The notes beneath the pieces are model-generated. The model searched no databases. It worked only from the letters and a program-made list of their open reading frames with translations, and was not told where the DNA came from. From positions 2,604,001-2,668,000 of the forward strand of contig NW_025964212.1 in the NCBI RefSeq assembly GCF_023055435.1: a DNA stretch of 64,000 nucleotides. Reading direction: 5' to 3'. Position numbers and translations under genes: made by a program. This document shows positions 29,967 through 64,000 of this stretch, piece by piece. Position 1 is the first letter of the stretch; each line of letters starts with the position of its first letter. Source of the DNA: Haliotis rufescens. Lineage: Eukaryota.

Positions 29967-30135
29967 GGTGGGGCGGTCGGGTAGCCTAGTGGTTAAAGCG
30001 TTGGCTCGTCACGCCGAAGACCCGGGTTCAATTTCCGACATGGGTACAATGTGTGAAGCCCGTTTCTGGTGTCCCCCGTCGTGATATTGCTGGAATATTG
30101 CTAAAAGCGGCATAAAACCATACTCACTCACTCAC
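29967..30135 (+). mobile_element. SINE family A, in probable CEP162 3' UTR
   Basis: Same consensus; TSD tgctattagg. Confidence 0.88.
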
Positions 30136-30288
30136 TGCTATTAGGGAGTCAAATTAACACACTGCTTGCATCAGACCAGTGTTAGATGTCAACAGTTATG
30201 ATTCAGTCAGAAAAGTGATGTAGTGAGTGAACTGGTGAAAGGTGTTTTACACTATAGTCAAGAATTGTAGCTATTACATGTGGTATGT

Positions 30289-31292: not shown

Positions 31293-31521
31293 TTCATATT
31301 TGTGTGACTTGCCCTTACTTGTCCGCACAAAATTGATCTTTGAACACACTCAATACCTCTAAAGTTTATTTACCATACTACATCACTAATCCCTGTGTTA
31401 CATGTAATTTGTCATGCTTTCTAAGGCTTGACATCAATCTGTGGGTACTGGAAGATTATGTGCACATATTCCCATTGACCCGTTAAGATCAGGGTAGAAT
31501 AGTTTCATCAACAACCCATGA

Positions 31522-31685
31522 GGGGCGGTTGGGTAGCATAGTGGTTAAACCGTTCTCCCGTCACGCCGAAGACCCGTGTTCGATTCCCGACATGGGTACA
31601 ATGTATGAAGCCCGTTTCTGGTGTCCCCCGCTGTGATACTGCTGGAATATTGCTAAAAGCGGCATAAAACCATACTCACTCACTC
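31522..31685 (+). mobile_element. SINE family A inserted into a family B SINE
   Basis: TSD caacaacccatga; flanks are family B sequence. Confidence 0.85.
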
Positions 31686-32041
31686 AACAACCCATGATTG
31701 TCGTAAGAGGCGACTAACAGGATCAGGTGGTCAGACTCGCAGTCATGTAGCTTGAATATTGCTGAGTGTGGTGCTAAACTACAAACTTGCTCCTATTACG
31801 TTTTACAGAAATGTGTCATTAATTTAAGTGACATTGGCAGCTGAGAGGCCTATCTTTGCTAAATTTATGGGATCAGGGTGCAACTTGGTTTTGATTGGTG
31901 CAACCTGGTTTTGATTGGTGCAACTTGGTTTTCATGTAAACATGCCCCTGGTACAAGTTAAATTCCTTAAATCAAGCACTGTGACCATATCTGTATCTCG
32001 AATGATCATATGTATTGATTGCCAGGGAGTGTAGGATTTCA

Positions 32042-45999: not shown

Positions 46000-46461
46000 A
46001 AGTTTCCATCCTTGCCGAACTAGGCTGGAATCCCTGGGCTCGATAGTAGCGCCACCATTGGTTATTACGAGTCATGTCCCTTCTGAGCCTCTGCTATGGA
46101 CCAATCAGATTCCACCTCTCGTATCACTTGCATTTGTATCAAACAAAATGGCGGCGCCCAGTCAAGACGATCTGATCGATAATCAAGTTCTATTGTGTGA
46201 TACAACGGGTCTTACATCGCTAAGTGCATTAAATTCCAGGAGCACCTTGATTAAAAACCTGAAAAGATTTGGAAAATATTTGTTGACAAGTTGGCGATGT
46301 ACATGCTTTGCAAATCCTGCAATCGACCGAAATCTACACAACAGTTTACTGACCGGATTTCGATTTTGTTGCGCGATTTTGATTAGACTATGCATAGACT
46401 CGTTAGTCCAGCCAAAATGTAACTCCATAATACCAGCCTAGTTCGGCAAGGGTGGAAACTT
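46000..46461. mobile_element. MITE-like element with 29-bp inverted repeats
   Basis: aagtttccatccttgccgaactaggctgg (46000-46028) vs ccagcctagttcggcaagggtggaaactt (46433-46461), 1 mismatch. Confidence 0.7.
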
Positions 46462-48362
46462 AGTAAAATCTAAATATTTTTTACATTTGTATACTTATCC
46501 TGCATTACTCCGTATTGCATTTACTGCTATGTTTGACAGAGAGACGAACTGTGTGAGATCCAGCTGCTGAAGAAAGTTGTCCCAACCAGCCCAGGAGGCA
46601 GCGCCCTCTCACAGTCGGCACGTGACCCGGAAGTCATGACGTCACACCAAAAGACATAACTGCTTTAAACATAACATCTGAAACTTCGTGGGGAGGTAGC
46701 GTAGCGAAAGGGAGGGAACTTAGACTTCGTAATGCAGGATAAGTATACAAATGTAAAAAATATTTAGATTTTACTAAATTTTTTAACTTATCCTGCATTA
46801 CTCCGTATTGCATCTTTATCAGACGGCTTGGCCGGTGGGCATACTTGCAGATGTGAACCATATTAAACCCTCGTCAAGGTCCGATGAATCCGCACCGCAT
46901 ACAAGTGATGACCGGAACATCTACGACCATTCCTGTCTTCAGGAAACAAGAGTCGATGCAAAAACGAAACGCCCGAATAGGTAACCGAAATACAATGAGG
47001 CGTGTAGCCAAAATATATAACTTACCGAAGAGCGAAAGCGAAACGCAGTAGAACCTAGAGCTAATCTGAGGTGATAAACACCAGAGAGTTCGACGGGCCC
47101 CGCTCGGGGAATCGAAGAATCAGCGGCGTCGGCGGCAAAATCTACGACCAATCCCAAGATCGAATGCGAAACGCAGGAGAGCCCTCTAGGCTGGAGGCAA
47201 GGAACACCGGTGAGGTCGACGGGCACCGCTCAGGTACCATAGAAGCAGCGGCGTTGGCGTCGGCGCCGGTGTCCACATCTACTACCATTCCTGTCGTCAG
47301 GAAACGAGAGTTGATGCAAAAAGTAAAACCCGGATAGGTGACAGCAATAGAATGAGTCGGGTAACCCAAAACTAAAACTGACCTAAGAGCGAATGCGGAA
47401 CGCAAGAGAGCCGTCTCGTCTGGGGTGATAAACACCAGAAAGGTCGACGGGCCCCGCTCAGGGTATCGGAGAATCAGTGGCGTCGGAGATAGATGACCTG
47501 TTGGGCTACAACCAGGGACCAAAACTTTTACAAACCTGTAGAGGTTATGAATTCTCTGATGAAATCCTCCTTGGGGCACTTATTGCATTTTCCTGGCTCA
47601 AGAAAATCTACATGACATAGTTGTAACCATTTTCCTTAATAAAAATTGTTACCACACAAAAAACTTTGTTTTTGTATGATATACGTCCACCCTTATGGTG
47701 CCTCACCCTCCACGGCGCGTCACGCCAAGGGAAGCAACTCTCACCCAAATCACTTTCCATATGTCTAATGCTGACGGAATGTGGGGAGGCGGGTGGCCGT
47801 GCCCCAAGGAGGATTTCATCAGAGAATTCATAACCTCTACAGGTTTGTAAAATTCTCTTTCAGATTAAATCCTCCTTGGGGCACTTATTGCATCAAGATA
47901 GACTCCTAAAGATAATCTAGGAAGTGGCATCCGTCAGCAACAAGCGTGCATAAAATACATCGTATTTTGATTATTTCAATGAATAAACAAGAGTTCAATA
48001 AATGGAACCAACCTTATCGTGAGGCACCACCGTCGAAAGGCGGGGGCTGGAGACAGGGCGTTATCGACCATACACAATGAAAAGAGCCATTCTTTGTGGC
48101 TCATCATATCGAGAACTCGAGACACACACACCCCCCACCCCACCCACTTTTTTGAACAAGTGATATTGGGGGCACAGATCACGAGAGACTATAAACCCGC
48201 ACAGAGCTAGGCCAGAGGGTCCCCGTAATCGAAGGAGTGCATGTGCAATTACGATGATTATCGACTAGTAATGGCTGGTATTGTATCGACCGTAGAAGAT
48301 AAAATCCGGACCGTTACTGAGCAGTGTTATAACCGGTCCGGGCGGTCTAAAATCTCGAAGGC

Positions 48363-51300
48363 TCAATCGGCTAGAGATGTAGTACTTTGCCCAGTTCGGA
48401 GAACTGACTGACCAAACCGAGCACGCTCGCTTGAGTGTTTGTCGAGTTGGTAATGTTTGATGAACGTGCTCGGCTGGCTCCAAATAGCCGCGGAGCAGAT
48501 CTCCTCAATGGGCAGAGCCGCAGCATACGCTTGTGTCGTAGCCACTGCTCTAACCGAATGAGCCTTCAACTTGGTAGGGGGGTCCCTGCCTTGAAGCGTG
48601 TACGCCGTACATATAGTAGAGACTATCCACCGCGAGATAGTTTGTTTGCTCGCAGGTGAGCCAGCCTTCCTACCGCCATAACAGCAAAATAGTTGATTAT
48701 CCTTACGGATACCCTTAGTTCTGCTGATATAGGACTTAAGGGTCCTGCGGACATCCAATACATGAGCATGTCTTGTAGTGGTCCCCGACGAGGAAGGCTG
48801 TGAAAGAGCAGGTAGCTCAATAGGAGCCGTCACGTGGAAGGCGTGTGCGACCTTAGGACGGTAAGAGTCCGGCAGGCGAATACTGACCCTGTCCCGGTGA
48901 AAGACAGTTAGTTCGGGATCGGCTGACATTGCGTGAATGTCGCCTACCCGTCTGCCGGACGTTACCGCCACAAGGAACGCCGTCTTCCAGCTCAACAGCT
49001 GAAGAGAGAGAGACGACAGATCCCGAAAGGAAGGACCGGACAGCCAATCAAGAACGATTGACAATTCCCAAGGGGGACTGATCCGCCGGACAGGCGGTCG
49101 GATCCTGTCCACACCTGCTAAAAAACGCTGCACTAATGGGTGCGCACCCAAAAGTGCCCCGTCGACGGGGACGTGAAAGGCAGCGATAGCTGTAGAGTAC
49201 CCCCGGACTGTCGATGCGGCCAGGCCGACATCTAGTCGCGACTGGAGGAACTCAAGTACGGCTACGAGATCTGCAGAAAAGGGATCTGCAATCCTTCTAT
49301 CGACACACCAGCGCGCATAGCAGGCCCATCTATCCTCGTACTGAACGTTTGTCGAATCCCTCCGCGAAGCCAGTATTGTGTCTGCAACTCGTGCAGGAAT
49401 ACCGCTCTCCTGGAGGCGATTCCGGACAGTGGCCAAGCCACCCACTGAATCCTGGGATTCGGGTGGAGGGCCTCGTTCTGGGATAGGAGGTCCGGTCGTA
49501 AAGGTAATAGAACAGGAGGCTGAGCCAGAAACCTGAGTATGACTGGAAACCAACTCTGCGCCGACCAAAGGGGTGCCAGGAGCACAAGTAGTCGCGCAGG
49601 CTGAGTGGCTAGCTGAGACAGGACCTTGGAAATCAGAGGTACTGGGGGGAATGCCCACAGTATTCTGTCCGTCCAATCTAGCTGGAAGGCGTCCGGTGCC
49701 ACCGACCTCGGGTCGGGGACTCGGGAGCAGAACGTTGGTGTCTGGTGATTCACCCCAGACGCAAACAGATCCACCTGGAACGACCCGTATAACTGGGAGA
49801 TAATCCCGAATATCCCCGGGTCGAGCCTCCACTCGTGAGGAGCGAGGATCCGGCGAGACAGAGCGTCCGCACGGACGTTGTCTACCCCCGGGAGATAAAC
49901 AGGTAGCACCCTGATAACGTGTGAGTCGCACCATAGGAGGAACTGCCACGTCTCTTGGAGAAGCGACGGAGACACCGTTCCCCCCTGCTTCCGGATGTAA
50001 GTCATCGCCGTTTGGTTGTCCATCTCTAGACGCACCACTTGGCCACGAAGCAGATCCAGGAAGCGTTGGAACACCAACCTGACCGCTCTCAGTTCTAGCA
50101 CATTGATATGCAGTTTGATCTCCTGCTGGGACCATAGTCCCGAGGCAGTGTGATCGTTCAGAACGCCTCCCCAGCCGGAGAGTGACGCGTCTGTTTGAAC
50201 TGTGAGAGACGGCACGGGAGTGTCGAGGGGGAGCCCCCGGGACAGATTCCCGACCTCGGTCCACCACTGAAGGTGTGCATTGAGCCACTGCGGAGTCTCG
50301 AGAACAGTCTCGAGATCTTCCGAGTTCACCCAAAGTCGACGGAGCGCTTGTTGAATGGGTCTCATTCTCAAGCGCGCCCGCCAAACCACATCCACTGTCG
50401 CCGCCATGTTGCCCAGTAACTGGAGCCATGTACGAGCAGTGTGACTGGCGGACAGAAGGAACTGGGAAGTAACACTTCTGACCTTGGTACTGCGATCTTG
50501 TGACAGAGATACAAGTCCGCTCACCGTGTTGAAATTCGCCCCTAGGAAGACTAGATTCTGAGTAGGGCTCAGATCTGACTTCTTGAGATTGACTATCCAC
50601 CCTAGAGTGATCAGAATATCTATCACTTGTTGTGTAGCTATCTGACTCAGGGATTGCGATAGAGCTCTTAGTAACCAGTCGTCGAGGTACGGATGGCAGA
50701 ACCGACCTTTTGACCTGGCCACTTGGGCGGGAATCAACATCAGCTTGGTGAACACCCTCGGGGCCGTAGCGATCCCGAATGGTAGAACCCTGAACTGATA
50801 ACACCTCCCGTCGAAAGAAAACCTGAGGTATTTCTTGAACTCGGGGTGTATGGGTACGTGGAGATAGGCGTCTTTTAGGTCTATTGACGTTAGCCATTCT
50901 CCGGTCTCGACAGCTGAGATCACCGAGCGCAGTGTCTCCATCCTGAAGGACGGTACCTCTATAAGTTTGTTCAGCCTTCTCAGATTGAGAATAGGCCTGA
51001 ACCCTCCGTCTTTTTTGGTGACTAGGAAATATGTCGAGTAGAAGCCCTCGCTTTCCTGTCCCACGGGAACCGGTTCGATCGCAGCCTTCATAAGAAGTGC
51101 GTCGACCTCGGCACGGAGGAATTCCGCCCTCTCCAGGGTAGCAGGCACCGGAGTGTGCTTTATCCCGGAGAAGGGGGGCGGATGATGTTTCCACCGAGGC
51201 AAATGGCCATCCCTTAGAGTGGACAGGGTCCAGGGATTGGATGTGACTGTCTCCCATTCCTGCAGGAATAGAGCCAGTCGGCCGCCTACGGGGACATCCG

Positions 51301-51695
51301 GCTTGAGGCAGCAGACCCCGGCTGTCGGCAGTTCGAAAACATGCGACCGTGGGTCCGCCCGGGGCGCTTCGGGCGCTAATGGGAACCCGATGGGTTCCCG
51401 GCCCCGCGAAAAGGCTGCTGGCCTCGACCAGCTGCCCTGCCCCGGCCCCTGCCTCTCTTGCTCCTCCCGGCGCCCTTACCTGAAGGAAGCGGCTGCTTCC
51501 AAGCAGGTGCAGACTTCTGACCCGGCGCGTCAGCGTAGGAGGAAGCAAGTGGAGAGGTCCGCTTACGCGGTTTAACGCATGGTACCTCCAACAAGGCCTT
51601 AGAATCCTTGATGGAGGCATACAACTGTGCGGCCTCTCGGACCACCTGCTGAGCCCCAGGGAAGAGGGTGGCACCCATCTTATAAGGCAAAGCAA
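48363..51695 (-). CDS. DIRS tyrosine recombinase ORF, copy A; YR domain in the last ~350 codons, the rest overlaps pol and gag
   Basis: KTAFLVAVTSGRRVGDIHAM, HSVRA, AAIWS...FIKHY (R-HxxR-W-Y catalytic set). Confidence 0.93.
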   Translation of the reverse strand: MLCLIRWVPPSSLGLSRWSERPHSCMPPSRILRPCWRYHALNRVSGPLHLLPPTLTRRVRSLHLLGSSRFLQVRAPGGAREAGAGAGQLVEASSLFAGPGTHRVPISARSAPGGPTVACFRTADSRGLLPQAGCPRRRPTGSIPAGMGDSHIQSLDPVHSKGWPFASVETSSAPLLRDKAHSGACYPGEGGIPPCRGRRTSYEGCDRTGSRGTGKRGLLLDIFPSHQKRRRVQAYSQSEKAEQTYRGTVLQDGDTALGDLSCRDRRMANVNRPKRRLSPRTHTPRVQEIPQVFFRREVLSVQGSTIRDRYGPEGVHQADVDSRPSGQVKRSVLPSVPRRLVTKSSIAIPESDSYTTSDRYSDHSRVDSQSQEVRSEPYSESSLPRGEFQHGERTCISVTRSQYQGQKCYFPVPSVRQSHCSYMAPVTGQHGGDSGCGLAGALENETHSTSAPSTLGELGRSRDCSRDSAVAQCTPSVVDRGRESVPGAPPRHSRAVSHSSNRRVTLRLGRRSERSHCLGTMVPAGDQTAYQCARTESGQVGVPTLPGSASWPSGASRDGQPNGDDLHPEAGGNGVSVASPRDVAVPPMVRLTRYQGATCLSPGGRQRPCGRSVSPDPRSSRVEARPGDIRDYLPVIRVVPGGSVCVWGESPDTNVLLPSPRPEVGGTGRLPARLDGQNTVGIPPSTSDFQGPVSASHSACATTCAPGTPLVGAELVSSHTQVSGSASCSITFTTGPPIPERGPPPESQDSVGGLATVRNRLQESGIPARVADTILASRRDSTNVQYEDRWACYARWCVDRRIADPFSADLVAVLEFLQSRLDVGLAASTVRGYSTAIAAFHVPVDGALLGAHPLVQRFLAGVDRIRPPVRRISPPWELSIVLDWLSGPSFRDLSSLSLQLLSWKTAFLVAVTSGRRVGDIHAMSADPELTVFHRDRVSIRLPDSYRPKVAHAFHVTAPIELPALSQPSSSGTTTRHAHVLDVRRTLKSYISRTKGIRKDNQLFCCYGGRKAGSPASKQTISRWIVSTICTAYTLQGRDPPTKLKAHSVRAVATTQAYAAALPIEEICSAAIWSQPSTFIKHYQLDKHSSERARFGQSVLRTGQSTTSLAD
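49262..51475 (-). CDS. DIRS pol: reverse transcriptase, RNase H and Dam-like methyltransferase, copy A (open from 51475, no upstream ATG)
   Basis: RT: VGGRL..F..W, KKDGGFRPILNL, IDLKDAY, LPFG, YLDDWL. RNase H: TDAS..GWG, HINVLEL, DN, ADALSR. MT: VDLFAS..N, WAFPP. Confidence 0.95.
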   Translation of the reverse strand, partial: GRREEQERQGPGQGSWSRPAAFSRGREPIGFPLAPEAPRADPRSHVFELPTAGVCCLKPDVPVGGRLALFLQEWETVTSNPWTLSTLRDGHLPRWKHHPPPFSGIKHTPVPATLERAEFLRAEVDALLMKAAIEPVPVGQESEGFYSTYFLVTKKDGGFRPILNLRRLNKLIEVPSFRMETLRSVISAVETGEWLTSIDLKDAYLHVPIHPEFKKYLRFSFDGRCYQFRVLPFGIATAPRVFTKLMLIPAQVARSKGRFCHPYLDDWLLRALSQSLSQIATQQVIDILITLGWIVNLKKSDLSPTQNLVFLGANFNTVSGLVSLSQDRSTKVRSVTSQFLLSASHTARTWLQLLGNMAATVDVVWRARLRMRPIQQALRRLWVNSEDLETVLETPQWLNAHLQWWTEVGNLSRGLPLDTPVPSLTVQTDASLSGWGGVLNDHTASGLWSQQEIKLHINVLELRAVRLVFQRFLDLLRGQVVRLEMDNQTAMTYIRKQGGTVSPSLLQETWQFLLWCDSHVIRVLPVYLPGVDNVRADALSRRILAPHEWRLDPGIFGIISQLYGSFQVDLFASGVNHQTPTFCSRVPDPRSVAPDAFQLDWTDRILWAFPPVPLISKVLSQLATQPARLLVLLAPLWSAQSWFPVILRFLAQPPVLLPLRPDLLSQNEALHPNPRIQWVAWPLSGIASRRAVFLHELQTQYWLRGGIRQTFSTRIDGPAMRAGVSIEGLQIPFLQIS

Positions 51696-53349
51696 GTAGA
51701 TCCTGGCGTGTGGAAGCCGAGTATTTGGATACCGACATCCACAGCCTGCGCATGCCCATGACTGCGCACATCATCTGCGAGGCACAGCTACGAATAGCGT
51801 CCCTCGCAAGATGACTATGTACCTCCGTCAGTTGCGCGGCCAACTCCGAAGAGTCGGCCGGCCCCTCTCCCGCTAACTCCCTCTGTACGGCCGACAGATA
51901 AGCGGAGTGTACGGACACCCGGAGCTGCTGACATGCGTTACGATATTGCTCCTCGAAGCAAACGTAAGCAGCCTTCAGCTCCGTACCGCACGCGGGAAAG
52001 GGTGGCAACCGCCGGCCCTGCTTGACCTTAGCCAAGTTGGGGGTCGAAGACCCCCCCAGGGTAACGGAGGTCCAGACGCATTCGTCCACCACCGGTACCT
52101 CAAAATCACCATCCTCTGCTAACGGGTACCGCTTAATAAGTTCGGGCAGGTCGAACTTCCTGCGGGCACCCGACAACAGAGGGTTGATGACTTCATGCAC
52201 CAATGAAGACAGAATACGGAGCCGCACCTGGGGCGCCTTGCTCGGAGCAAAAGCGTCCCCCGGAAGGCGGAACTCAGTCGGATCCGACTGGGGCATGGGC
52301 GCAGCCACCTGAGGCAGTACCTGGACAATTTTGTCCCGTACATGCCTCAACGAGGAAACGAAGGAAAATATTCCCGAGGTCTCCGAGTCGTCTCCCCCCT
52401 CCTCCATCCACTCCTCCTCTCTCGATTCCGAGCCGAAATTAATCGACTCTTCCCCGAGAGAAGAGGCAGACGAAGTCGGAAGGGGACGCCCGAAGGCCTG
52501 GGCCTTCGCATCCCCGGGCTGCACCCGGCCCGAAGCCGAGTCCCGGTCCCGAGGTGCCGGGGGTTCAAGGGAACCCACCTGGCTCTGGGCTAGAAATCCG
52601 CTAGAGGAAGCCTCGGCCTCGGAAGAGGCGTCTGGCTCCGCTAGGGAGAACTGTGCGTCGGTAGTGAACGGGCCAGTGCCCGCCACCCCTCCGCTGGGGA
52701 GCGACCTCGAGCCGGCGCCGAAGCCCGGTCTGAGTTCGTCCCCGAGACCAAGTGGCCTGCCTCGGCCGACGCCGGGCATATCACAAGGTCTCGAAGCCGC
52801 GTCCGGCGCCGACAACGGGGAAGGCTCGGTCCGCAACTCCTCTCGGAGCTGAGACTTTACCTCCTCCATCATCGACGCCATCTGCGACCTCAACAAGGCA
52901 GAGATGTCTGCCAAAGACGGTGCAGGAGAGGGTGCAGTGATTGTGACGGGGACCCTAGAGCCTTCTCCCCCGGCCCCCGGGGAGGGAGCGGAGGAGACAG
53001 TCTCAGCTGCCTTTTTACCCTTTCTTACTTTTTTTGAGGGGGGCGGGGCGGTCTTTGCCGACCTAATGTCCACCCCCGCCTTCAATAGACCCTTAAAGTG
53101 TAAGAGGTCCACATTTCTCTTTTTTTGCGCCCGTGGTGTAAATGCAACACAGATCGGGCATGACCCATCGTCATGCCCGTCTTCGGCCAAACACTTTATG
53201 CAGGTATCATGCCTGTCTTGGGGGGGAATCGAAGCCGAGCACCCCGTACACAGTTTGAAGGTCTGTAAAAAAGACCGTAATTTTTGAGTTTGGCGGGAAG
53301 GGTAATAAAGTGTATCAGTGCGATTGAAAGATCGGAAAGATACGTGCAT
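51376..53349 (-). CDS. DIRS gag-like ORF1, copy A
   Basis: N-terminal CxxC...H..CxxC...H...CxxC zinc-finger motif; position 5' of pol; first ATG at 53349. Confidence 0.85.
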   Translation of the reverse strand: MHVSFRSFNRTDTLYYPSRQTQKLRSFLQTFKLCTGCSASIPPQDRHDTCIKCLAEDGHDDGSCPICVAFTPRAQKKRNVDLLHFKGLLKAGVDIRSAKTAPPPSKKVRKGKKAAETVSSAPSPGAGGEGSRVPVTITAPSPAPSLADISALLRSQMASMMEEVKSQLREELRTEPSPLSAPDAASRPCDMPGVGRGRPLGLGDELRPGFGAGSRSLPSGGVAGTGPFTTDAQFSLAEPDASSEAEASSSGFLAQSQVGSLEPPAPRDRDSASGRVQPGDAKAQAFGRPLPTSSASSLGEESINFGSESREEEWMEEGGDDSETSGIFSFVSSLRHVRDKIVQVLPQVAAPMPQSDPTEFRLPGDAFAPSKAPQVRLRILSSLVHEVINPLLSGARRKFDLPELIKRYPLAEDGDFEVPVVDECVWTSVTLGGSSTPNLAKVKQGRRLPPFPACGTELKAAYVCFEEQYRNACQQLRVSVHSAYLSAVQRELAGEGPADSSELAAQLTEVHSHLARDAIRSCASQMMCAVMGMRRLWMSVSKYSASTRQDLLALPYKMGATLFPGAQQVVREAAQLYASIKDSKALLEVPCVKPRKRTSPLASSYADAPGQKSAPAWKQPLPSGKGAGRSKRGRGRGRAAGRGQQPFRGAGNPSGSH

Positions 53350-54052
53350 AAATTGTGTAACTAGAAGCAAAGGCGTAATTTAGAATGCGATTGGTAACGC
53401 GATACTAATAGCCAATGTCGTAGTATAATTATAACACCAAAGTGGGCGTGTTACGCGCGAAGGTGTAGAAAACCCGTAAAAAAGGTAAGTGTAATTTAAA
53501 ATAATTAACACACCACCTTGGGTTTATTTAAAGGAAAAGATTGTAGGCTAAAGCCCGATGATATAGATTAAAAAACCGAAGCCGTTTTTGATGGCCCTGG
53601 TGTTACATATATCATACGTGGCACTACAAAATGGACGCTACGACGGCCTTATTTCAAAGGTATCGTACACGTGTCACATAATTACAACTTTATAACTTTA
53701 CAATGCGAGGTATTACGCCTTTGCATGAAAGAAATGTACCATACATACAGTTTGGTCTGCCATGGTTCTTGTACAAACGATAATCTTGTCTTTATATTGT
53801 CTTGAAAAAAACAGCACGTCTGTCTTTGTCAGATGACATAAGGAAAGTGATTTGGGTGAGAGTTGCTTCCCTTGGCGTGACGCGCCGTGGAGGGTGAGGC
53901 ACCATAAGGGTGGACGTATATCATACAAAAACAAAGTTTTTTGTGTGGTAACAATTTTTATTAAGGAAAATGGTTACAACTATGTCATGTAGATTTTCTT
54001 GAGCCAGGAAAATGCAATAAGTGCCCCAAGGAGGATTTAATCTGAAAGAGAA

Positions 54053-55604: not shown

Positions 55605-57044
55605 CAGGGCGTGACCGAGAATGCACTGTCAGCAAGTGCCGTCCTGGATAAGCATTTATCTCGAGGCTGTTGCTGTGCCTATGGTGTTGATCTCTGGATC
55701 ACAGGTGGTCACAATGTGGGCTGGCGTGGGCCACTAGCCACTGACAAGGTGGCAGGGGAGGTAGTCAGCAACAGGGGTCTGCGATTGCGTACCGTCGGTA
55801 CGATTCGGAAAAAGGTGTGATCGCCTGCGAGCCAACCTCAAGTAGACGAAGTAAACTAGCTTCACAATCGACCGCCGGGGCATCGACGTAACCGGGTAGT
55901 AGGAAGTCGAGGCAATATGGCCATTGCACGAAGTAATGAGATCGTTTTCATCCCTGAAGCGGCGTATAAGTACTCCTGTTCTTATATCGAGGTGACGATG
56001 GAGGACGACAACACGATACGAGGCAGGTATGCAACAGGGGTCAGTGGGACGGCCGAGGGACTTTAAGTATCAAATCGACACTGTGTCCGGTAGTCAAGGC
56101 GGAAGATAGGAAGGTGTCGTAGTCGAAAAGATCAAACCGGACGAAGGAAGGCGATCTTTTCCATCCCTTGAACGCCTATAGGCGCTATCGTTCTTATAGC
56201 GAAGGGTTTTTACAAACCTGTAGAGGTTATGAATTCTCTGATGAAATCCTCCTTGGGGCACTTATTGCATTTTCCTGGCTCAAGAAAATCTACATGACAT
56301 AGTTGTAACCATTTTCCTTAATAAAAATTGTTACCACACAAAAAACTTTGTTTTTGTATGATATACGTCCACCCTTATGGTGCCTCACCCTCCACGGCGC
56401 GTCACGCCAAGGGAAGCAACTCTCACCCAAATCACTTTCCATATGTCTAATGCTGACGGAATGTGGGGAGGCGGGTGGCCGTGCCCCAAGGAGGATTTCA
56501 TCAGAGAATTCATAACCTCTACAGGTTTGTAAAATTCTCTTTCAGATTAAATCCTCCTTGGGGCACTTATTGCATCAAGATAGACTCCTAAAGATAATCT
56601 AGGAAGTGGCATCCGTCAGCAACAAGCGTGCATAAAATACATCGTATTTTGATTATTTCAATGAATAAACAAGAGTTCAATAAATGGAACCAACCTTATC
56701 GTGAGGCACCACCGTCGAAAGGCGGGGGCTGGAGACAGGGCGTTATCGACCATACACAATGAAAAGAGCCATTCTTTGTGGCTCATCATATCGAGAACTC
56801 GAGACACACACACCCCCCACCCCACCCACTTTTTTGAACAAGTGATATTGGGGGCACAGATCACGAGAGACTATAAACCCGCACAGAGCTAGGCCAGAGG
56901 GTCCCCGTAATCGAAGGAGTGCATGTGCAATTACGATGATTATCGACTAGTAATGGCTGGTATTGTATCGACCGTAGAAGATAAAATCCGGACCGTTACT
57001 GAGCAGTGTTATAACCGGTCCGGGCGGTCTAAAATCTCGAAGGC

Positions 57045-60000
57045 TCAATCGGCTAGAGATGTAGTACTTTGCCCAGTTCGGAGAACTGACTGACCAAACC
57101 GAGCACGCTCGCTTGAGTGTTTGTCGAGTTGGTAATGTTTGATGAACGTGCTCGGCTGGCTCCAAATAGCCGCGGAGCAGATCTCCTCAATGGGCAGAGC
57201 CGCAGCATACGCTTGTGTCGTAGCCACTGCTCTAACCGAATGAGCCTTCAACTTGGTAGGGGGGTCCCTGCCTTGAAGCGTGTACGCCGTACATATAGTA
57301 GAGACTATCCACCGCGAGATAGTTTGTTTGCTCGCAGGTGAGCCAGCCTTCCTACCGCCATAACAGCAAAATAGTTGATTATCCTTACGGATACCCTTAG
57401 TTCTGCTGATATAGGACTTAAGGGTCCTGCGGACATCCAATACATGAGCATGTCTTGTAGTGGTCCCCGACGAGGAAGGCTGTGAAAGAGCAGGTAGCTC
57501 AATAGGAGCCGTCACGTGGAAGGCGTGTGCGACCTTAGGACGGTAAGAGTCCGGCAGGCGAATACTGACCCTGTCCCGGTGAAAGACAGTTAGTTCGGGA
57601 TCGGCTGACATTGCGTGAATGTCGCCTACCCGTCTGCCGGACGTTACCGCCACAAGGAACGCCGTCTTCCAGCTCAACAGCTGAAGAGAGAGAGACGACA
57701 GATCCCGAAAGGAAGGACCGGACAGCCAATCAAGAACGATTGACAATTCCCAAGGGGGACTGATCCGCCGGACAGGCGGTCGGATCCTGTCCACACCTGC
57801 TAAAAAACGCTGCACTAATGGGTGCGCACCCAAAAGTGCCCCGTCGACGGGGACGTGAAAGGCAGCGATAGCTGTAGAGTACCCCCGGACTGTCGATGCG
57901 GCCAGGCCGACATCTAGTCGCGACTGGAGGAACTCAAGTACGGCTACGAGATCTGCAGAAAAGGGATCTGCAATCCTTCTATCGACACACCAGCGCGCAT
58001 AGCAGGCCCATCTATCCTCGTACTGAACGTTTGTCGAATCCCTCCGCGAAGCCAGTATTGTGTCTGCAACTCGTGCAGGAATACCGCTCTCCTGGAGGCG
58101 ATTCCGGACAGTGGCCAAGCCACCCACTGAATCCTGGGATTCGGGTGGAGGGCCTCGTTCTGGGATAGGAGGTCCGGTCGTAAAGGTAATAGAACAGGAG
58201 GCTGAGCCAGAAACCTGAGTATGACTGGAAACCAACTCTGCGCCGACCAAAGGGGTGCCAGGAGCACAAGTAGTCGCGCAGGCTGAGTGGCTAGCTGAGA
58301 CAGGACCTTGGAAATCAGAGGTACTGGGGGGAATGCCCACAGTATTCTGTCCGTCCAATCTAGCTGGAAGGCGTCCGGTGCCACCGACCTCGGGTCGGGG
58401 ACTCGGGAGCAGAACGTTGGTGTCTGGTGATTCACCCCAGACGCAAACAGATCCACCTGGAACGACCCGTATAACTGGGAGATAATCCCGAATATCCCCG
58501 GGTCGAGCCTCCACTCGTGAGGAGCGAGGATCCGGCGAGACAGAGCGTCCGCACGGACGTTGTCTACCCCCGGGAGATAAACAGGTAGCACCCTGATAAC
58601 GTGTGAGTCGCACCATAGGAGGAACTGCCACGTCTCTTGGAGAAGCGACGGAGACACCGTTCCCCCCTGCTTCCGGATGTAAGTCATCGCCGTTTGGTTG
58701 TCCATCTCTAGACGCACCACTTGGCCACGAAGCAGATCCAGGAAGCGTTGGAACACCAACCTGACCGCTCTCAGTTCTAGCACATTGATATGCAGTTTGA
58801 TCTCCTGCTGGGACCATAGTCCCGAGGCAGTGTGATCGTTCAGAACGCCTCCCCAGCCGGAGAGTGACGCGTCTGTTTGAACTGTGAGAGACGGCACGGG
58901 AGTGTCGAGGGGGAGCCCCCGGGACAGATTCCCGACCTCGGTCCACCACTGAAGGTGTGCATTGAGCCACTGCGGAGTCTCGAGAACAGTCTCGAGATCT
59001 TCCGAGTTCACCCAAAGTCGACGGAGCGCTTGTTGAATGGGTCTCATTCTCAAGCGCGCCCGCCAAACCACATCCACTGTCGCCGCCATGTTGCCCAGTA
59101 ACTGGAGCCATGTACGAGCAGTGTGACTGGCGGACAGAAGGAACTGGGAAGTAACACTTCTGACCTTGGTACTGCGATCTTGTGACAGAGATACAAGTCC
59201 GCTCACCGTGTTGAAATTCGCCCCTAGGAAGACTAGATTCTGAGTAGGGCTCAGATCTGACTTCTTGAGATTGACTATCCACCCTAGAGTGATCAGAATA
59301 TCTATCACTTGTTGTGTAGCTATCTGACTCAGGGATTGCGATAGAGCTCTTAGTAACCAGTCGTCGAGGTACGGATGGCAGAACCGACCTTTTGACCTGG
59401 CCACTTGGGCGGGAATCAACATCAGCTTGGTGAACACCCTCGGGGCCGTAGCGATCCCGAATGGTAGAACCCTGAACTGATAACACCTCCCGTCGAAAGA
59501 AAACCTGAGGTATTTCTTGAACTCGGGGTGTATGGGTACGTGGAGATAGGCGTCTTTTAGGTCTATTGACGTTAGCCATTCTCCGGTCTCGACAGCTGAG
59601 ATCACCGAGCGCAGTGTCTCCATCCTGAAGGACGGTACCTCTATAAGTTTGTTCAGCCTTCTCAGATTGAGAATAGGCCTGAACCCTCCGTCTTTTTTGG
59701 TGACTAGGAAATATGTCGAGTAGAAGCCCTCGCTTTCCTGTCCCACGGGAACCGGTTCGATCGCAGCCTTCATAAGAAGTGCGTCGACCTCGGCACGGAG
59801 GAATTCCGCCCTCTCCAGGGTAGCAGGCACCGGAGTGTGCTTTATCCCGGAGAAGGGGGGCGGATGATGTTTCCACCGAGGCAAATGGCCATCCCTTAGA
59901 GTGGACAGGGTCCAGGGATTGGATGTGACTGTCTCCCATTCCTGCAGGAATAGAGCCAGTCGGCCGCCTACGGGGACATCCGGCTTGAGGCAGCAGACCC

Positions 60001-60377
60001 CGGCTGTCGGCAGTTCGAAAACATGCGACCGTGGGTCCGCCCGGGGCGCTTCGGGCGCTAATGGGAACCCGATGGGTTCCCGGCCCCGCGAAAAGGCTGC
60101 TGGCCTCGACCAGCTGCCCTGCCCCGGCCCCTGCCTCTCTTGCTCCTCCCGGCGCCCTTACCTGAAGGAAGCGGCTGCTTCCAAGCAGGTGCAGACTTCT
60201 GACCCGGCGCGTCAGCGTAGGAGGAAGCAAGTGGAGAGGTCCGCTTACGCGGTTTAACGCATGGTACCTCCAACAAGGCCTTAGAATCCTTGATGGAGGC
60301 ATACAACTGTGCGGCCTCTCGGACCACCTGCTGAGCCCCAGGGAAGAGGGTGGCACCCATCTTATAAGGCAAAGCAA
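57045..60377 (-). CDS. DIRS tyrosine recombinase ORF, copy B
   Basis: SGRRVGD, HSVRA, FIKHY; identical translation to copy A. Confidence 0.93.
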   Translation of the reverse strand: MLCLIRWVPPSSLGLSRWSERPHSCMPPSRILRPCWRYHALNRVSGPLHLLPPTLTRRVRSLHLLGSSRFLQVRAPGGAREAGAGAGQLVEASSLFAGPGTHRVPISARSAPGGPTVACFRTADSRGLLPQAGCPRRRPTGSIPAGMGDSHIQSLDPVHSKGWPFASVETSSAPLLRDKAHSGACYPGEGGIPPCRGRRTSYEGCDRTGSRGTGKRGLLLDIFPSHQKRRRVQAYSQSEKAEQTYRGTVLQDGDTALGDLSCRDRRMANVNRPKRRLSPRTHTPRVQEIPQVFFRREVLSVQGSTIRDRYGPEGVHQADVDSRPSGQVKRSVLPSVPRRLVTKSSIAIPESDSYTTSDRYSDHSRVDSQSQEVRSEPYSESSLPRGEFQHGERTCISVTRSQYQGQKCYFPVPSVRQSHCSYMAPVTGQHGGDSGCGLAGALENETHSTSAPSTLGELGRSRDCSRDSAVAQCTPSVVDRGRESVPGAPPRHSRAVSHSSNRRVTLRLGRRSERSHCLGTMVPAGDQTAYQCARTESGQVGVPTLPGSASWPSGASRDGQPNGDDLHPEAGGNGVSVASPRDVAVPPMVRLTRYQGATCLSPGGRQRPCGRSVSPDPRSSRVEARPGDIRDYLPVIRVVPGGSVCVWGESPDTNVLLPSPRPEVGGTGRLPARLDGQNTVGIPPSTSDFQGPVSASHSACATTCAPGTPLVGAELVSSHTQVSGSASCSITFTTGPPIPERGPPPESQDSVGGLATVRNRLQESGIPARVADTILASRRDSTNVQYEDRWACYARWCVDRRIADPFSADLVAVLEFLQSRLDVGLAASTVRGYSTAIAAFHVPVDGALLGAHPLVQRFLAGVDRIRPPVRRISPPWELSIVLDWLSGPSFRDLSSLSLQLLSWKTAFLVAVTSGRRVGDIHAMSADPELTVFHRDRVSIRLPDSYRPKVAHAFHVTAPIELPALSQPSSSGTTTRHAHVLDVRRTLKSYISRTKGIRKDNQLFCCYGGRKAGSPASKQTISRWIVSTICTAYTLQGRDPPTKLKAHSVRAVATTQAYAAALPIEEICSAAIWSQPSTFIKHYQLDKHSSERARFGQSVLRTGQSTTSLAD
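57944..60157 (-). CDS. DIRS pol (RT-RNaseH-MT), copy B
   Basis: YLDD, TDAS, VDLFAS, WAFPP; identical translation to copy A. Confidence 0.95.
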   Translation of the reverse strand, partial: GRREEQERQGPGQGSWSRPAAFSRGREPIGFPLAPEAPRADPRSHVFELPTAGVCCLKPDVPVGGRLALFLQEWETVTSNPWTLSTLRDGHLPRWKHHPPPFSGIKHTPVPATLERAEFLRAEVDALLMKAAIEPVPVGQESEGFYSTYFLVTKKDGGFRPILNLRRLNKLIEVPSFRMETLRSVISAVETGEWLTSIDLKDAYLHVPIHPEFKKYLRFSFDGRCYQFRVLPFGIATAPRVFTKLMLIPAQVARSKGRFCHPYLDDWLLRALSQSLSQIATQQVIDILITLGWIVNLKKSDLSPTQNLVFLGANFNTVSGLVSLSQDRSTKVRSVTSQFLLSASHTARTWLQLLGNMAATVDVVWRARLRMRPIQQALRRLWVNSEDLETVLETPQWLNAHLQWWTEVGNLSRGLPLDTPVPSLTVQTDASLSGWGGVLNDHTASGLWSQQEIKLHINVLELRAVRLVFQRFLDLLRGQVVRLEMDNQTAMTYIRKQGGTVSPSLLQETWQFLLWCDSHVIRVLPVYLPGVDNVRADALSRRILAPHEWRLDPGIFGIISQLYGSFQVDLFASGVNHQTPTFCSRVPDPRSVAPDAFQLDWTDRILWAFPPVPLISKVLSQLATQPARLLVLLAPLWSAQSWFPVILRFLAQPPVLLPLRPDLLSQNEALHPNPRIQWVAWPLSGIASRRAVFLHELQTQYWLRGGIRQTFSTRIDGPAMRAGVSIEGLQIPFLQIS

Positions 60378-62031
60378 GTAGATCCTGGCGTGTGGAAGCC
60401 GAGTATTTGGATACCGACATCCACAGCCTGCGCATGCCCATGACTGCGCACATCATCTGCGAGGCACAGCTACGAATAGCGTCCCTCGCAAGATGACTAT
60501 GTACCTCCGTCAGTTGCGCGGCCAACTCCGAAGAGTCGGCCGGCCCCTCTCCCGCTAACTCCCTCTGTACGGCCGACAGATAAGCGGAGTGTACGGACAC
60601 CCGGAGCTGCTGACATGCGTTACGATATTGCTCCTCGAAGCAAACGTAAGCAGCCTTCAGCTCCGTACCGCACGCGGGAAAGGGTGGCAACCGCCGGCCC
60701 TGCTTGACCTTAGCCAAGTTGGGGGTCGAAGACCCCCCCAGGGTAACGGAGGTCCAGACGCATTCGTCCACCACCGGTACCTCAAAATCACCATCCTCTG
60801 CTAACGGGTACCGCTTAATAAGTTCGGGCAGGTCGAACTTCCTGCGGGCACCCGACAACAGAGGGTTGATGACTTCATGCACCAATGAAGACAGAATACG
60901 GAGCCGCACCTGGGGCGCCTTGCTCGGAGCAAAAGCGTCCCCCGGAAGGCGGAACTCAGTCGGATCCGACTGGGGCATGGGCGCAGCCACCTGAGGCAGT
61001 ACCTGGACAATTTTGTCCCGTACATGCCTCAACGAGGAAACGAAGGAAAATATTCCCGAGGTCTCCGAGTCGTCTCCCCCCTCCTCCATCCACTCCTCCT
61101 CTCTCGATTCCGAGCCGAAATTAATCGACTCTTCCCCGAGAGAAGAGGCAGACGAAGTCGGAAGGGGACGCCCGAAGGCCTGGGCCTTCGCATCCCCGGG
61201 CTGCACCCGGCCCGAAGCCGAGTCCCGGTCCCGAGGTGCCGGGGGTTCAAGGGAACCCACCTGGCTCTGGGCTAGAAATCCGCTAGAGGAAGCCTCGGCC
61301 TCGGAAGAGGCGTCTGGCTCCGCTAGGGAGAACTGTGCGTCGGTAGTGAACGGGCCAGTGCCCGCCACCCCTCCGCTGGGGAGCGACCTCGAGCCGGCGC
61401 CGAAGCCCGGTCTGAGTTCGTCCCCGAGACCAAGTGGCCTGCCTCGGCCGACGCCGGGCATATCACAAGGTCTCGAAGCCGCGTCCGGCGCCGACAACGG
61501 GGAAGGCTCGGTCCGCAACTCCTCTCGGAGCTGAGACTTTACCTCCTCCATCATCGACGCCATCTGCGACCTCAACAAGGCAGAGATGTCTGCCAAAGAC
61601 GGTGCAGGAGAGGGTGCAGTGATTGTGACGGGGACCCTAGAGCCTTCTCCCCCGGCCCCCGGGGAGGGAGCGGAGGAGACAGTCTCAGCTGCCTTTTTAC
61701 CCTTTCTTACTTTTTTTGAGGGGGGCGGGGCGGTCTTTGCCGACCTAATGTCCACCCCCGCCTTCAATAGACCCTTAAAGTGTAAGAGGTCCACATTTCT
61801 CTTTTTTTGCGCCCGTGGTGTAAATGCAACACAGATCGGGCATGACCCATCGTCATGCCCGTCTTCGGCCAAACACTTTATGCAGGTATCATGCCTGTCT
61901 TGGGGGGGAATCGAAGCCGAGCACCCCGTACACAGTTTGAAGGTCTGTAAAAAAGACCGTAATTTTTGAGTTTGGCGGGAAGGGTAATAAAGTGTATCAG
62001 TGCGATTGAAAGATCGGAAAGATACGTGCAT
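60058..62031 (-). CDS. DIRS gag-like ORF1, copy B
   Basis: Identical translation to copy A. Confidence 0.85.
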   Translation of the reverse strand: MHVSFRSFNRTDTLYYPSRQTQKLRSFLQTFKLCTGCSASIPPQDRHDTCIKCLAEDGHDDGSCPICVAFTPRAQKKRNVDLLHFKGLLKAGVDIRSAKTAPPPSKKVRKGKKAAETVSSAPSPGAGGEGSRVPVTITAPSPAPSLADISALLRSQMASMMEEVKSQLREELRTEPSPLSAPDAASRPCDMPGVGRGRPLGLGDELRPGFGAGSRSLPSGGVAGTGPFTTDAQFSLAEPDASSEAEASSSGFLAQSQVGSLEPPAPRDRDSASGRVQPGDAKAQAFGRPLPTSSASSLGEESINFGSESREEEWMEEGGDDSETSGIFSFVSSLRHVRDKIVQVLPQVAAPMPQSDPTEFRLPGDAFAPSKAPQVRLRILSSLVHEVINPLLSGARRKFDLPELIKRYPLAEDGDFEVPVVDECVWTSVTLGGSSTPNLAKVKQGRRLPPFPACGTELKAAYVCFEEQYRNACQQLRVSVHSAYLSAVQRELAGEGPADSSELAAQLTEVHSHLARDAIRSCASQMMCAVMGMRRLWMSVSKYSASTRQDLLALPYKMGATLFPGAQQVVREAAQLYASIKDSKALLEVPCVKPRKRTSPLASSYADAPGQKSAPAWKQPLPSGKGAGRSKRGRGRGRAAGRGQQPFRGAGNPSGSH

Positions 62032-63644
62032 AAATTGTGTAACTAGAAGCAAAGGCGTAATTTAGAATGCGATTGGTAACGCGATACTAATAGCCAATGT
62101 CGTAGTATAATTATAACACCAAAGTGGGCGTGTTACGCGCGAAGGTGTAGAAAACCCGTAAAAAAGGTAAGTGTAATTTAAAATAATTAACACACCACCT
62201 TGGGTTTATTTAAAGGAAAAGATTGTAGGCTAAAGCCCGATGATATAGATTAAAAAACCGAAGCCGTTTTTGATGGCCCTGGTGTTACATATATCATACG
62301 TGGCACTACAAAATGGACGCTACGACGGCCTTATTTCAAAGGTATCGTACACGTGTCACATAATTACAACTTTATAACTTTACAATGCGAGGTATTACGC
62401 CTTTGCATGAAAGAAATGTACCATACATACAGTTTGGTCTGCCATGGTTCTTGTACAAACGATAATCTTGTCTTTATATTGTCTTGAAAAAAACAGCACG
62501 TCTGTCTTTGTCAGATGACATAAGGAAAGTGATTTGGGTGAGAGTTGCTTCCCTTGGCGTGACGCGCCGTGGAGGGTGAGGCACCATAAGGGTGGACGTA
62601 TATCATACAAAAACAAAGTTTTTTGTGTGGTAACAATTTTTATTAAGGAAAATGGTTACAACTATGTCATGTAGATTTTCTTGAGCCAGGAAAATGCAAT
62701 AAGTGCCCCAAGGAGGATTTAATCTGAAAGAGAATGATGAAACAAGGTTCCTCGTGACAGCCGTGTTGGTAGAGGAGGTCTATTGTTTCCAACATCCGTG
62801 CATGGATGGACTGCGACAGGCGCCTGGTTGAGTGGTATCACCAAGCGTACAGGTAGACATGGAAACCAATCTGTAGAAATACATGGCACCCCTTGCCATG
62901 GTAAGTTGACCTAAATCCGGTCGGAGTTGTTGACAGTCCGAGTACTTGACACGTGACATGTAAATCACTCTGCGCAGTAGCCGAGAAAACCGCCTTGGAG
63001 TCGGAACTGAGGTGCAAACTCCACACACAGACAATCCTCAATGAACTGTGTGAGAGACGATCAAGTGGTGTACCCGAGTTTTGCGATAAAACACGGAACC
63101 CCATGGGCGTCGTGTAAAACCCGGGGAGCGCCGAGGAAGAGTCTCTCTCAGGAACGCTGGCGCTAGGGTAGGGTAGAACAGCGTTGATGTCTGCGATGTC
63201 GACGAAGTAAACTCTTTGTAAGTGGATGTCGTCATCGAATCTGATACAGACGCTGTTCACATGGCGCTCTGTTTCGATGGAAACCCGCAGGTCATCTCTC
63301 CGGAATCATAGCGCTTTAAACGACGGGATTATGGATAACGTCTCAGTGGGCAAGCTGAATCAGACCAACTGTCTATTGGTTGAAATGATTCCACCCAGGA
63401 AGTAGTACGATAGTCACGATCCCGAAGACCGACGGGAGAGTAGCGACAGGAGCGGCGACAGTTGTTTCACCATGCTTCTCCGTGTGACGAGTTATGAGAC
63501 GGCAGCAAGAGAAGAGGGCAGTGGCGCCGGGGAGGCGATTGCCGATGGTGCCCCTTAAGCCGCAGTAGAAGATCGGATGGTCGGCTCGTTGATCTGAGCT
63601 TGATAAAGCTTGTTGATCTGAAGCTTGTTGAGCGCCGAAGACAT

Positions 63645-64000
63645 CAGAGGATGCGGAGGCGCCGGAGCGCGGAGACATCAGAGGCGCCGAGACATCAGCG
63701 GCGCCGAGTCATCAGAGGCGCCGGTGGCACCGAGTCATCGGAGGCGCCGGGAGCGCCGAGTCATCAGCTTGTCATGAACAAGTCATGAAGCTTGTTGAGC
63801 GCCGAGACATCAGCGGCGCCGAGTCATCGGAAGCGCCGGAGGCACCGAGTCATCAGAGGCGCCGAGTCATCGGAGGCGCCGGGAGCGCCGAGTCAGAGGC
63901 GCCGAGTCATCAGAAGCGCCGGAGGCGCCGTGTCATTGGAGGCGCCGGAGGCGCCGGAGGCGCCGCGTCATCGGAAGCGCCGGAGGCGCCGTGTCATCAG
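63645..64000 (+). repeat. GC-rich short-period repeat (GGCGCCGAGTCATCAGA-like) in the host DIRS gag-like region
   Basis: Visible tandem units. Confidence 0.75.

What the first reader, a model, noticed from the sequence alone, without database searches (positions are those of the whole stretch)
46460..64000. Two apparently identical, intact DIRS retrotransposons inserted independently into one older DIRS element of another family
Seen: copies A (47526-54052) and B (56208-62734) have identical ORF translations at a fixed offset of 8682, but all four flanks differ, so this is not a simple tandem duplication. The flanks are pieces of one degraded DIRS element with different termini, in the same orientation. 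Established: Dictyostelium DIRS-1 accumulates within other DIRS-1 copies. Inference: two hits about 2.15 kb apart suggest an active metazoan DIRS family that targets a different DIRS family as a safe haven, or that re-integrates locally.
Basis: partly seen in the sequence, partly recalled or inferred. Interest (0 to 1): 0.85.

Follow-up and report, generated by a model that had tools for sequence, protein, structure and literature searches.

The report
Sister DIRS retrotransposons nested in another
Two letter-for-letter identical copies of an active DIRS retrotransposon sit 2.15 kb apart inside one copy of a second, gene-dead but recently amplified DIRS family in a mollusc genome. They look like parent and daughter, which points to local re-insertion and not to targeting of the host family.

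Summary
47526-54054 and 56208-62736 are 100% identical over 6529 nt. Each is a complete DIRS1-like element with 211-nt inverted terminal repeats, an internal complementary region (ICR) matching both ends, gag-like, RT-RNaseH-methyltransferase and tyrosine-recombinase ORFs.

Both lie in the same orientation inside one 6,064-nt DIRS-shaped element (46456 to about 65577, past the window end). About 80 uninterrupted paralogues of that host show both empty sites. Each insertion is exact, at a T|G step, with no target-site duplication. The inserted DNA is exactly the 6,527-nt circle predicted by the ICR.

- **The host is not old.** Its family has at least 96 copies at 97-100% identity. It has no RT/RNase H and only frameshifted methyltransferase and recombinase remnants, so it is non-autonomous.
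- **The insertions are not independent.** A and B share a private substitution found nowhere else in the assembly (2 hits against 40 for the ancestral form).
- **Host-family targeting is not supported.** None of 16 other copies with flanks, and none of 94 others by coordinates, sits in that family.

The family does cluster locally: 7 pairs within 50 kb against 0.34 expected.

DIRS clustering and homing are already described elsewhere, so interest is moderate.

The parts
46456..47525 (-). Host DIRS, 3' piece (P1). Left terminal extension 46456-46484, ITR 46485-46666, ICR 46729-46813, and internal ~355-nt repeats 46917-47486.
   Evidence: Inverted repeats. At least 40 paralogues at 98-100% identity. 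The left end is ambiguous within 46456-46460.
47526..54053 (-). Copy A, an autonomous DIRS1-like element. The inserted DNA is 6,527 nt; one terminal T cannot be assigned to element or target.
   Evidence: The empty site in 78 of 82 paralogues reads ...AAAAC-TG-TGAACG...
47555..47765 (.). Copy A inverted terminal repeat, 3' arm. Its partner is 53835-54045 (211 nt, 99% complementary).
   Evidence: I1.
47799..47893 (.). Copy A internal complementary region. 47799-47852 pairs with the left end 47526-47579, and 47852-47893 pairs with the right end 54012-54053. It encodes the circle junction GAGAA-TTTT-ACAAACC.
   Evidence: I5 and I10.
48363..49499 (-). Copy A tyrosine recombinase. It is the C-terminal 378 aa of the 1110-aa open frame 48363-51695.
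   Evidence: PHROG integrase 2.3e-5. Pfam Phage_integrase 0.0057, below cutoff. R...HxxR...HY motifs are visible in the translation.
49262..51202 (-). Copy A RT-RNaseH-methyltransferase ORF, 646 aa, with a YLDD motif.
   Evidence: Pfam RVT_1 1.5e-21. Dam-like and RT_RNaseH matches are weak. 1140 homologues; the best named ones are from Haliotis.
51376..53370 (-). Copy A gag-like ORF1, 664 aa, with a Cys/His-rich N-terminus.
50490..50490 (.). Private substitution shared by A and B (also at 59172). It is C on the + strand where other copies have A, giving Ser instead of Ile at RT codon 238.
   Evidence: Genome-wide, the derived 37-mer has 2 hits and the ancestral 37-mer has 40.
54055..56207 (-). 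Host DIRS, middle piece (P2). Frameshifted recombinase remnant at about 54060-55050, and methyltransferase remnant at 54920-55577. No RT or RNase H.
   Evidence: tblastn 4e-8 to methyltransferase parts of DIRS proteins. At least 40 paralogues at 95-100% identity.
56208..62735 (-). Copy B, identical to A, with every feature at +8682: ITRs 56237-56447 / 62517-62727, ICR 56481-56575, YR 57045-58181, RT 57944-59884, gag 60058-62052.
   Evidence: The empty site in 77 of 78 paralogues reads ...AGGGT-TG-ATGAAAC...
62737..64000 (-). Host DIRS, 5' piece (P3). It continues to about 65577 outside the window (L031:2737-5577). It carries a variable 17/26-nt tandem array from about 63600, and the right ITR at 65395-65576.

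Best explanation
The locus is a three-element nest made in order. (1) A copy of a young, non-autonomous DIRS1-like family (6,064 nt, with ITRs and ICR intact, RT/RNase H gone, methyltransferase and recombinase frames broken) inserted here. It was presumably mobilised in trans by an autonomous relative. (2) A 6,527-nt autonomous DIRS1-like element integrated into it. (3) A second copy of that same lineage integrated 2.15 kb away in the same orientation. Because the two share a private mutation, one is most likely the daughter of the other. Each integration fits the standard DIRS route. The ICR templates a closed circle with the junction GAGAA-TTTT-ACAAACC, and the element's tyrosine recombinase crosses this junction with a short T-containing target, without target-site duplication or loss of host bases. 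The double hit reflects a local or regional bias of re-integration in this family. It does not reflect recognition of the host family's sequence. Shown: the identity, the element anatomy, the exact empty sites, the sister relationship, the genome-wide clustering, and the absence of host-family enrichment. Inferred: parent-daughter direction, the circle intermediate, trans-mobilisation of the host, and the cause of the local bias.
For: - 0 of 6529 mismatches, with identity ending exactly at the ICR-defined ends.
- The empty sites are contiguous in 78-82 paralogues and differ only by the 'TG' that frames each insert. The inserted length therefore equals the ICR-predicted circle.
- One private nonsynonymous SNP is shared by A and B only: 0 of 16 other aligned copies, and 2 against 40 genome-wide hits.
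- The family is very young: the closest copies differ from A/B by 1-4 nt in 6.5 kb.
- Among 96 copies with an exact ICR junction, 7 pairs lie within 50 kb against 0.34 expected.
- Site B (GGG before the T run) is the only one of 18 sites without the usual A run. This suggests proximity and not sequence drove that hit.
- The host has no RT/RH but has a methyltransferase remnant, and its broken frames are shared by 99-100% identical paralogues.
- Literature: the junction-trinucleotide integration model, with AAT/ATT in molluscs (PMC3266345). DIRS-1 inserts into DIRS-1 and its proteins act in trans (PMC7192593). DIRS1 hot spots and 'homing' in fishes (PMC5941688).
Against:
- The nest is 19.1 kb of nested high-copy repeats. 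A primary assembly could have combined two heterozygous insertions (a haplotype mosaic) or joined two host copies through P2.
- The sister relationship rests on a single SNP. Gene conversion between direct repeats 2 kb apart could also explain it.
- No mechanism for local bias of a retrotransposon is established.
- The more distant pairs for which sequences were in hand (139 kb to 1.5 Mb apart) are not each other's closest relatives.
Confidence: 0.58

Rival explanations
1. Regional hot spot. Both DIRS families accumulate in the same permissive or heterochromatic regions, and two separate retrotransposition events from one active source happened to land in the same 6-kb element.
For: A-family and host-family copies co-localise: 5 pairs within 50 kb against 0.68 expected. 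Host copies also cluster with each other. The A family clusters with itself. Earlier scan notes report DIRS hot spots elsewhere in this genome (unchecked). FISH hot spots of DIRS1 are known in fishes (PMC5941688).
Against: It does not explain why the two closest copies in space are also the only two carriers of a private mutation among 42. It would need an unsampled or lost donor carrying that allele.
Confidence: 0.15
2. Assembly artefact. The two inserts are real but not in cis. Either they are heterozygous insertions on different haplotypes merged into one mosaic path, or two different host copies were mis-joined through the near-identical 2.15-kb P2.
For: P1 is 100% identical to another host copy, and P2 is within about 1-3 nt of several others. 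Spanning from unique DNA to unique DNA needs a read longer than 19 kb. The contig is only 3.27 Mb.
Against: All four junctions have the exact DIRS integration geometry, so both insertions into host-family DNA must exist in the reads. The private SNP links them in any case. No N runs or composition breaks are present.
Confidence: 0.12
3. Sequence-specific targeting of the host DIRS family as a safe haven.
For: Two of 18 full-length copies with flanks lie in host-family DNA, which makes up only about 0.04% of the genome. Both sites share T|G followed by (A)TGAA.
Against: Both hits are in one host copy. 0 of 16 other flank pairs match the host family. None of 94 further copies lies in nest geometry relative to 96 host copies. 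At least 78 paralogous copies of each site are empty. The family's general target is an A run followed by T(T) and is not host-specific.
Confidence: 0.05
4. Gene conversion. Two older independent insertions in the same host were homogenised to identity, including the private SNP.
For: They are direct repeats of 6.5 kb only 2.15 kb apart, which is a good conversion substrate.
Against: It still needs two hits in one 6-kb element. Complete identity over 6.5 kb, in a family whose youngest members already differ by only 1-4 nt, is explained more simply by recency.
Confidence: 0.05

Closest known systems
DIRS1-like retrotransposons of molluscs (AcaDIRS1/2 of Aplysia, LgDIRS1-3 of Lottia; Piednoel et al. 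2011, PMC3266345)
   Same: ITRs plus an ICR complementary to both termini. RT-RH-MT and YR genes. The sense strand starts with ATT and the ICR junction contains AAT. No target-site duplication.
   Different: Longer (6.5 kb against 4.7-5.8 kb), with 211-nt ITRs. The closest named proteins are uncharacterised Haliotis predictions at 66-86% identity. Inferred targets are AAAT(T)-like and not a strictly identical trinucleotide (AAT at 11 of 18 sites).
Dictyostelium DIRS-1 self-nesting, and zebrafish DIRS1 'homing' into pre-existing copies (PMC7192593, PMC5941688)
   Same: DIRS elements accumulate in and near other DIRS elements, forming clusters.
   Different: Here the recipient belongs to a different, non-autonomous family, and no genome-wide preference for that family exists. 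The signal is proximity of sister copies, not sequence homing.
Non-autonomous retroelement derivatives mobilised in trans (LARD/TRIM for LTR elements; trans action of DIRS-1 proteins shown in PMC7192593)
   Same: The host keeps perfect replication signals (ITRs, ICR), lacks RT/RH, and has at least 96 near-identical copies.
   Different: It is a DIRS-type derivative. Its autonomous partner was not identified. Its termini resemble those of A only weakly (z about 3.4).
Local hopping of DNA transposons (Ac/Ds, P element) and Crypton tyrosine-recombinase DNA transposons
   Same: A daughter copy lies a few kb from the parent. A tyrosine recombinase could in principle excise and re-insert a circle.
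   Different: No excision footprint or DNA-level movement is shown. The element has full retrotransposition machinery.

Membership tests
DIRS1-like retrotransposon (copies A and B) | Reverse transcriptase domain | tested here: met
   Pfam RVT_1 E=1.5e-21, 77.5 bits, above the cutoff of 29.6. YLDD motif present.
DIRS1-like retrotransposon (copies A and B) | RNase H and Dam-like methyltransferase domains downstream of RT | tested here: inconclusive
   PF17917 at 0.0015 and PF05869 at 0.0003, both below Pfam cutoffs. Order and position fit, and homologues carry PF17917.
DIRS1-like retrotransposon (copies A and B) | Tyrosine recombinase instead of a DDE integrase | tested here: met
   PHROG_1 integrase 2.3e-5 over residues 77-351. 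Pfam PF00589 0.0057, below cutoff. R / HxxR / HY motifs are visible. No PDB sequence match.
DIRS1-like retrotransposon (copies A and B) | Inverted terminal repeats | tested here: met
   211 nt, 99% complementary.
DIRS1-like retrotransposon (copies A and B) | Internal complementary region matching both termini side by side | tested here: met
   47799-47852 pairs with the left end and 47852-47893 with the right end, both 100%.
DIRS1-like retrotransposon (copies A and B) | Integration without target-site duplication | tested here: met
   Empty sites are seen directly in about 80 paralogues for both inserts. A length-consistent empty site was also found for a third copy.
DIRS1-like retrotransposon (copies A and B) | Target carries the same trinucleotide as the circle junction (AAT) | tested here: inconclusive
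   AAT is present at 11 of 18 inferred targets. Sites A (ACT) and B (GTT) are not AAT.
Non-autonomous DIRS derivative (host element) | Intact ITRs and ICR of DIRS geometry | tested here: met
   182-nt ITRs at 98%. ICR pairs with both ends over 53 and 37 nt.
Non-autonomous DIRS derivative (host element) | Lacks its own RT; coding remnants only | tested here: met
   120 DIRS RT-RH-MT proteins give no tblastn hit to their RT/RH parts. Methyltransferase parts hit in several frames at 4e-8. No Pfam hits.
Non-autonomous DIRS derivative (host element) | Recent amplification despite dead genes | tested here: met
   P1 and P2 have at least 40 scored copies at 95-100% identity. 96 loci have at least one exact empty-site pattern.
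Non-autonomous DIRS derivative (host element) | Mobilised in trans by an identified autonomous partner | not tested
   The partner was not sought.

The most novel reading that the evidence does not exclude
This metazoan DIRS family re-integrates preferentially within a few kb to tens of kb of its donor copy. That is local hopping, which is normal for DNA transposons but not for retrotransposons. One possible cause is that the tyrosine recombinase acts on a nuclear circle made near the donor. Another is that it excises and re-inserts the integrated element at the DNA level, as Cryptons do, after replication.
Probability: 0.25. Interest if true: 0.65.

Novelty: new member of a known kind. Interest (0 to 1): 0.4.

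Why it matters
DIRS elements are the least understood order of retrotransposons. Their integration step has hardly been studied outside Dictyostelium. This locus gives two insertion events whose empty sites can be read directly in about 80 paralogues. That shows at single-base resolution that the inserted DNA equals the ICR-predicted circle and that no host base is gained or lost.

The locus also reveals two things in a mollusc: a currently active autonomous family (about 40 copies carrying the RT segment that was probed, 18 of them aligned full-length at 99-100% identity) and an abundant non-autonomous DIRS family.

If the sister-copy proximity reflects a real local bias, it offers a simple route to the DIRS clusters and hot spots seen in amoebae and fishes. 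It would also be testable by genotyping.

Tried and rejected
- **Tandem or segmental duplication:** rejected. All four flanks differ, the flanks are contiguous in paralogues, and the repeat unit ends exactly at the element ends.
- **Old, decayed host:** rejected. Its family is 97-100% identical across many copies.
- **Host-family targeting:** rejected as a general property.
- **Self-nesting of other A copies:** their flanks do not match the element.
- **Cross-mobilisation of the host by A:** the termini are only weakly alike, so this is left open.
- **A strict 3-bp identical-core crossover model:** it does not reproduce the T-run partition seen in most copies, so only a compositional target preference is claimed.
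- **More genome loci:** Later genome-wide tests therefore used coordinates and short pattern matches only.
- **PDB sequence search with the recombinase:** found nothing.
- **Pfam on other large ORFs of the window and on the ORF right of the host:** nothing useful.
- **Joined host pieces:** for only, the three host pieces were joined in a script, solely to locate inverted repeats. Nothing was translated or printed from that join.
Full report
**Observation.** At offset 8682 the window holds two stretches, 47526-54054 and 56208-62736, with 0 mismatches over 6529 nt. Identity ends at both borders. There are no N runs.

Each stretch is a complete DIRS1-like retrotransposon read on the minus strand:
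- 211-nt inverted terminal repeats (47555-47765 / 53835-54045, 99% complementary).
- An internal complementary region (ICR) at 47799-47893. Its first 54 nt are the exact complement of the left end (47526-47579) and its last 42 nt are the exact complement of the right end (54012-54053).
- A gag-like ORF (51376-53370).
- An RT-RNaseH-methyltransferase ORF (49262-51202; Pfam RVT_1 1.5e-21, weak Dam-like and RNase H matches, YLDD motif).
- A tyrosine recombinase in the last 378 codons of the open frame 48363-51695 (PHROG integrase 2.3e-5; Pfam PF00589 0.0057; R/HxxR/HY motifs visible).

The best named protein relatives are uncharacterised Haliotis proteins at 66-86% identity. The genome is 1.33 Gb in 615 contigs.

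**The host.** The flanks are three consecutive pieces of one other DIRS-shaped element: P1 46456-47525, P2 54055-56207, and P3 62737 to about 65577. P3 was read past the window end in L031. The element has its own 182-nt ITRs (46485-46666 / 65395-65576, 98%). Its own ICR (46729-46813) is complementary to both of its ends. Without the inserts it is 6,064 nt and has the same orientation as A and B.

It has no long open frames and no Pfam matches. 120 DIRS RT-RH-MT proteins hit only a methyltransferase remnant, split over frames (54920-55577, best 4e-8), and nothing for RT or RNase H. Frameshifted recombinase motifs are visible between about 54060 and 55050.

The element is not old, however. P1 and P2 each have at least 40 scored paralogues at 95-100% identity, several at 100%. 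96 loci carry at least one exact empty-site pattern. The dead genes are therefore a shared trait of a recently amplified, non-autonomous DIRS family. DIRS-1 proteins are known to act in trans (PMC7192593). An earlier scan note had flagged a 'probable non-autonomous DIRS' elsewhere in this genome, and the present data agree with it.

**Empty sites.** In paralogues, P1, P2 and P3 hits abut, with exactly 2 nt between them. Pattern searches read those 2 nt directly:
- Site A is ...AAAAC-TG-TGAACG... in 78 of 82 copies.
- Site B is ...AGGGT-TG-ATGAAAC... in 77 of 78 copies.

In the window the element sits between that T and G at both sites. Both insertions are therefore exact, with no target-site duplication and no loss of host bases. 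The inserted DNA is 6,527 nt. It contributes four T's in all, which is exactly what the ICR predicts for the closed junction GAGAA-TTTT-ACAAACC.

This fits the published DIRS model of a circle recombined with the target by the tyrosine recombinase at the junction trinucleotide, which is AAT/ATT in molluscan elements (PMC3266345). Applying the four-T rule to 16 other copies gives a target consensus of an A run followed by one or two T's. A is found at 14 of 18 sites at each of positions -3 to -1, and AAT at 11 of 18 sites. For one further copy, a diverged paralogue of its target inside this window has the length the rule predicts. Sites A and B are off-consensus. B is the only one of 18 with no A run.

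**Are the two insertions independent?** No. In an alignment of 18 full-length copies, A and B share one state found in no other copy: window 50490 / 59172, giving Ser instead of Ile at RT codon 238. Genome-wide, the 37-mer with the derived base occurs twice, both times here. The ancestral 37-mer occurs 40 times.

The two closest copies in space are thus exclusive sisters among 42. For a random pair, lying within 10 kb has a probability of about 1.5e-5. The family is very young: the nearest other copies differ from A/B by 1-4 nt in 6.5 kb.

**Is the host family a target?** No.
- None of the 32 flanks (1.5 kb each) of 16 other full-length copies matches the host family. One has a weak 77% match to a DIRS-like terminus.
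- None of 94 further copies located by an exact ICR-junction 36-mer lies in the geometry of a nest relative to the 96 host loci.
- About 80 paralogous copies of each site are unoccupied.

The flanks of other copies hold ordinary short interspersed repeats.

**Clustering.** The family does cluster. Among 96 exact-ICR copies, 7 pairs lie within 50 kb against 0.34 expected (Poisson P about 8e-8). There are 11 pairs within 200 kb against 1.4 expected. At least two of these pairs are not recent duplicates, because the distance from ICR to the RT marker differs between partners, or the marker is missing in one.

A-family and host-family copies also lie near each other more often than expected: 5 pairs within 50 kb against 0.68 expected. 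DIRS hot spots and 'homing' are already described for Dictyostelium and fishes.

**Reading.** The best explanation is a nest built in order: the non-autonomous host first, then one integration of the autonomous element, then a daughter (or sibling from a lost parent) integrating 2.15 kb away. This reflects a local or regional bias of this family and not recognition of the host family.

The rivals are:
- a pure regional hot spot with an unsampled donor;
- an assembly mosaic or mis-join through the near-identical P2;
- gene conversion;
- host-family targeting, which is now unlikely.

Even under the assembly rival, both insertions into host-family DNA must exist in the reads, because all four junctions have exact DIRS geometry.

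**Limits.**
- The sister link rests on one SNP.
- Copy counts from the genome search are lower bounds.
The host pieces were joined once inside a script, only to find inverted repeats.

**Novelty.** This is a new, well-resolved example of known DIRS behaviour (nesting and clustering), in a mollusc, with an active autonomous family and a non-autonomous DIRS family. The suggestion of donor-proximal re-integration is the only part that would be new, and it is not yet shown.

Noticed in passing
window 46000-46461: A MITE-like 462-nt unit with 32-nt terminal inverted repeats (94%) abuts the host's left end. An 89% copy lies in the flank of another A-family copy (L018).
   Followed up: partly
window 48363-51695 (and 57045-60377), minus strand: A 1110-codon open frame overlaps the whole RT ORF in another frame. 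Only its last ~380 codons look like recombinase. The first ~730 are low-complexity R/S/P/G-rich. How the recombinase is translated is unclear; another first-reader note proposes recoding at the gag end.
   Followed up: no
L021/L022 (G000:C1:19599691-19607560): An A-family copy with an internal tandem duplication of element positions 2359-3699. The RT marker 37-mer occurs twice, 1339 nt apart.
   Followed up: partly
G000:C445:36287952 and 36293040 (not fetched): Two exact A-family ICR junctions lie 5.1 kb apart in opposite orientation. This is incompatible with two intact side-by-side elements. It may be a self-nest or a rearranged pair.
   Followed up: no
genome-wide: 96 exact (201 with up to 2 mismatches) A-type ICR junctions, but only 42 copies of the RT marker. 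ICR-to-marker distances vary (1278-2635 nt). The A family therefore also has internally deleted derivatives.
   Followed up: partly
window 63600-64000 and L031:3600-4520: The host 5' region holds a 17/26-nt tandem array (GAGTCATCAGAGGCGCC-like units). Its length varies among paralogues: P3 is 85-97% identical where P1/P2 are 99-100%.
   Followed up: partly
window 1785-1935, 24852-25019, 29970-30136, 31521-31686, 41444-41607: A ~170-nt interspersed repeat occurs many times in the window and in flanks of several A-family copies. ~260-nt repeats at 2755-3022 and 44900-45146 behave likewise.
   Followed up: no
window 44680-44915: Three tandem ~80-nt units (93% and 69% identity) lie just upstream of the nest.
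   Followed up: no
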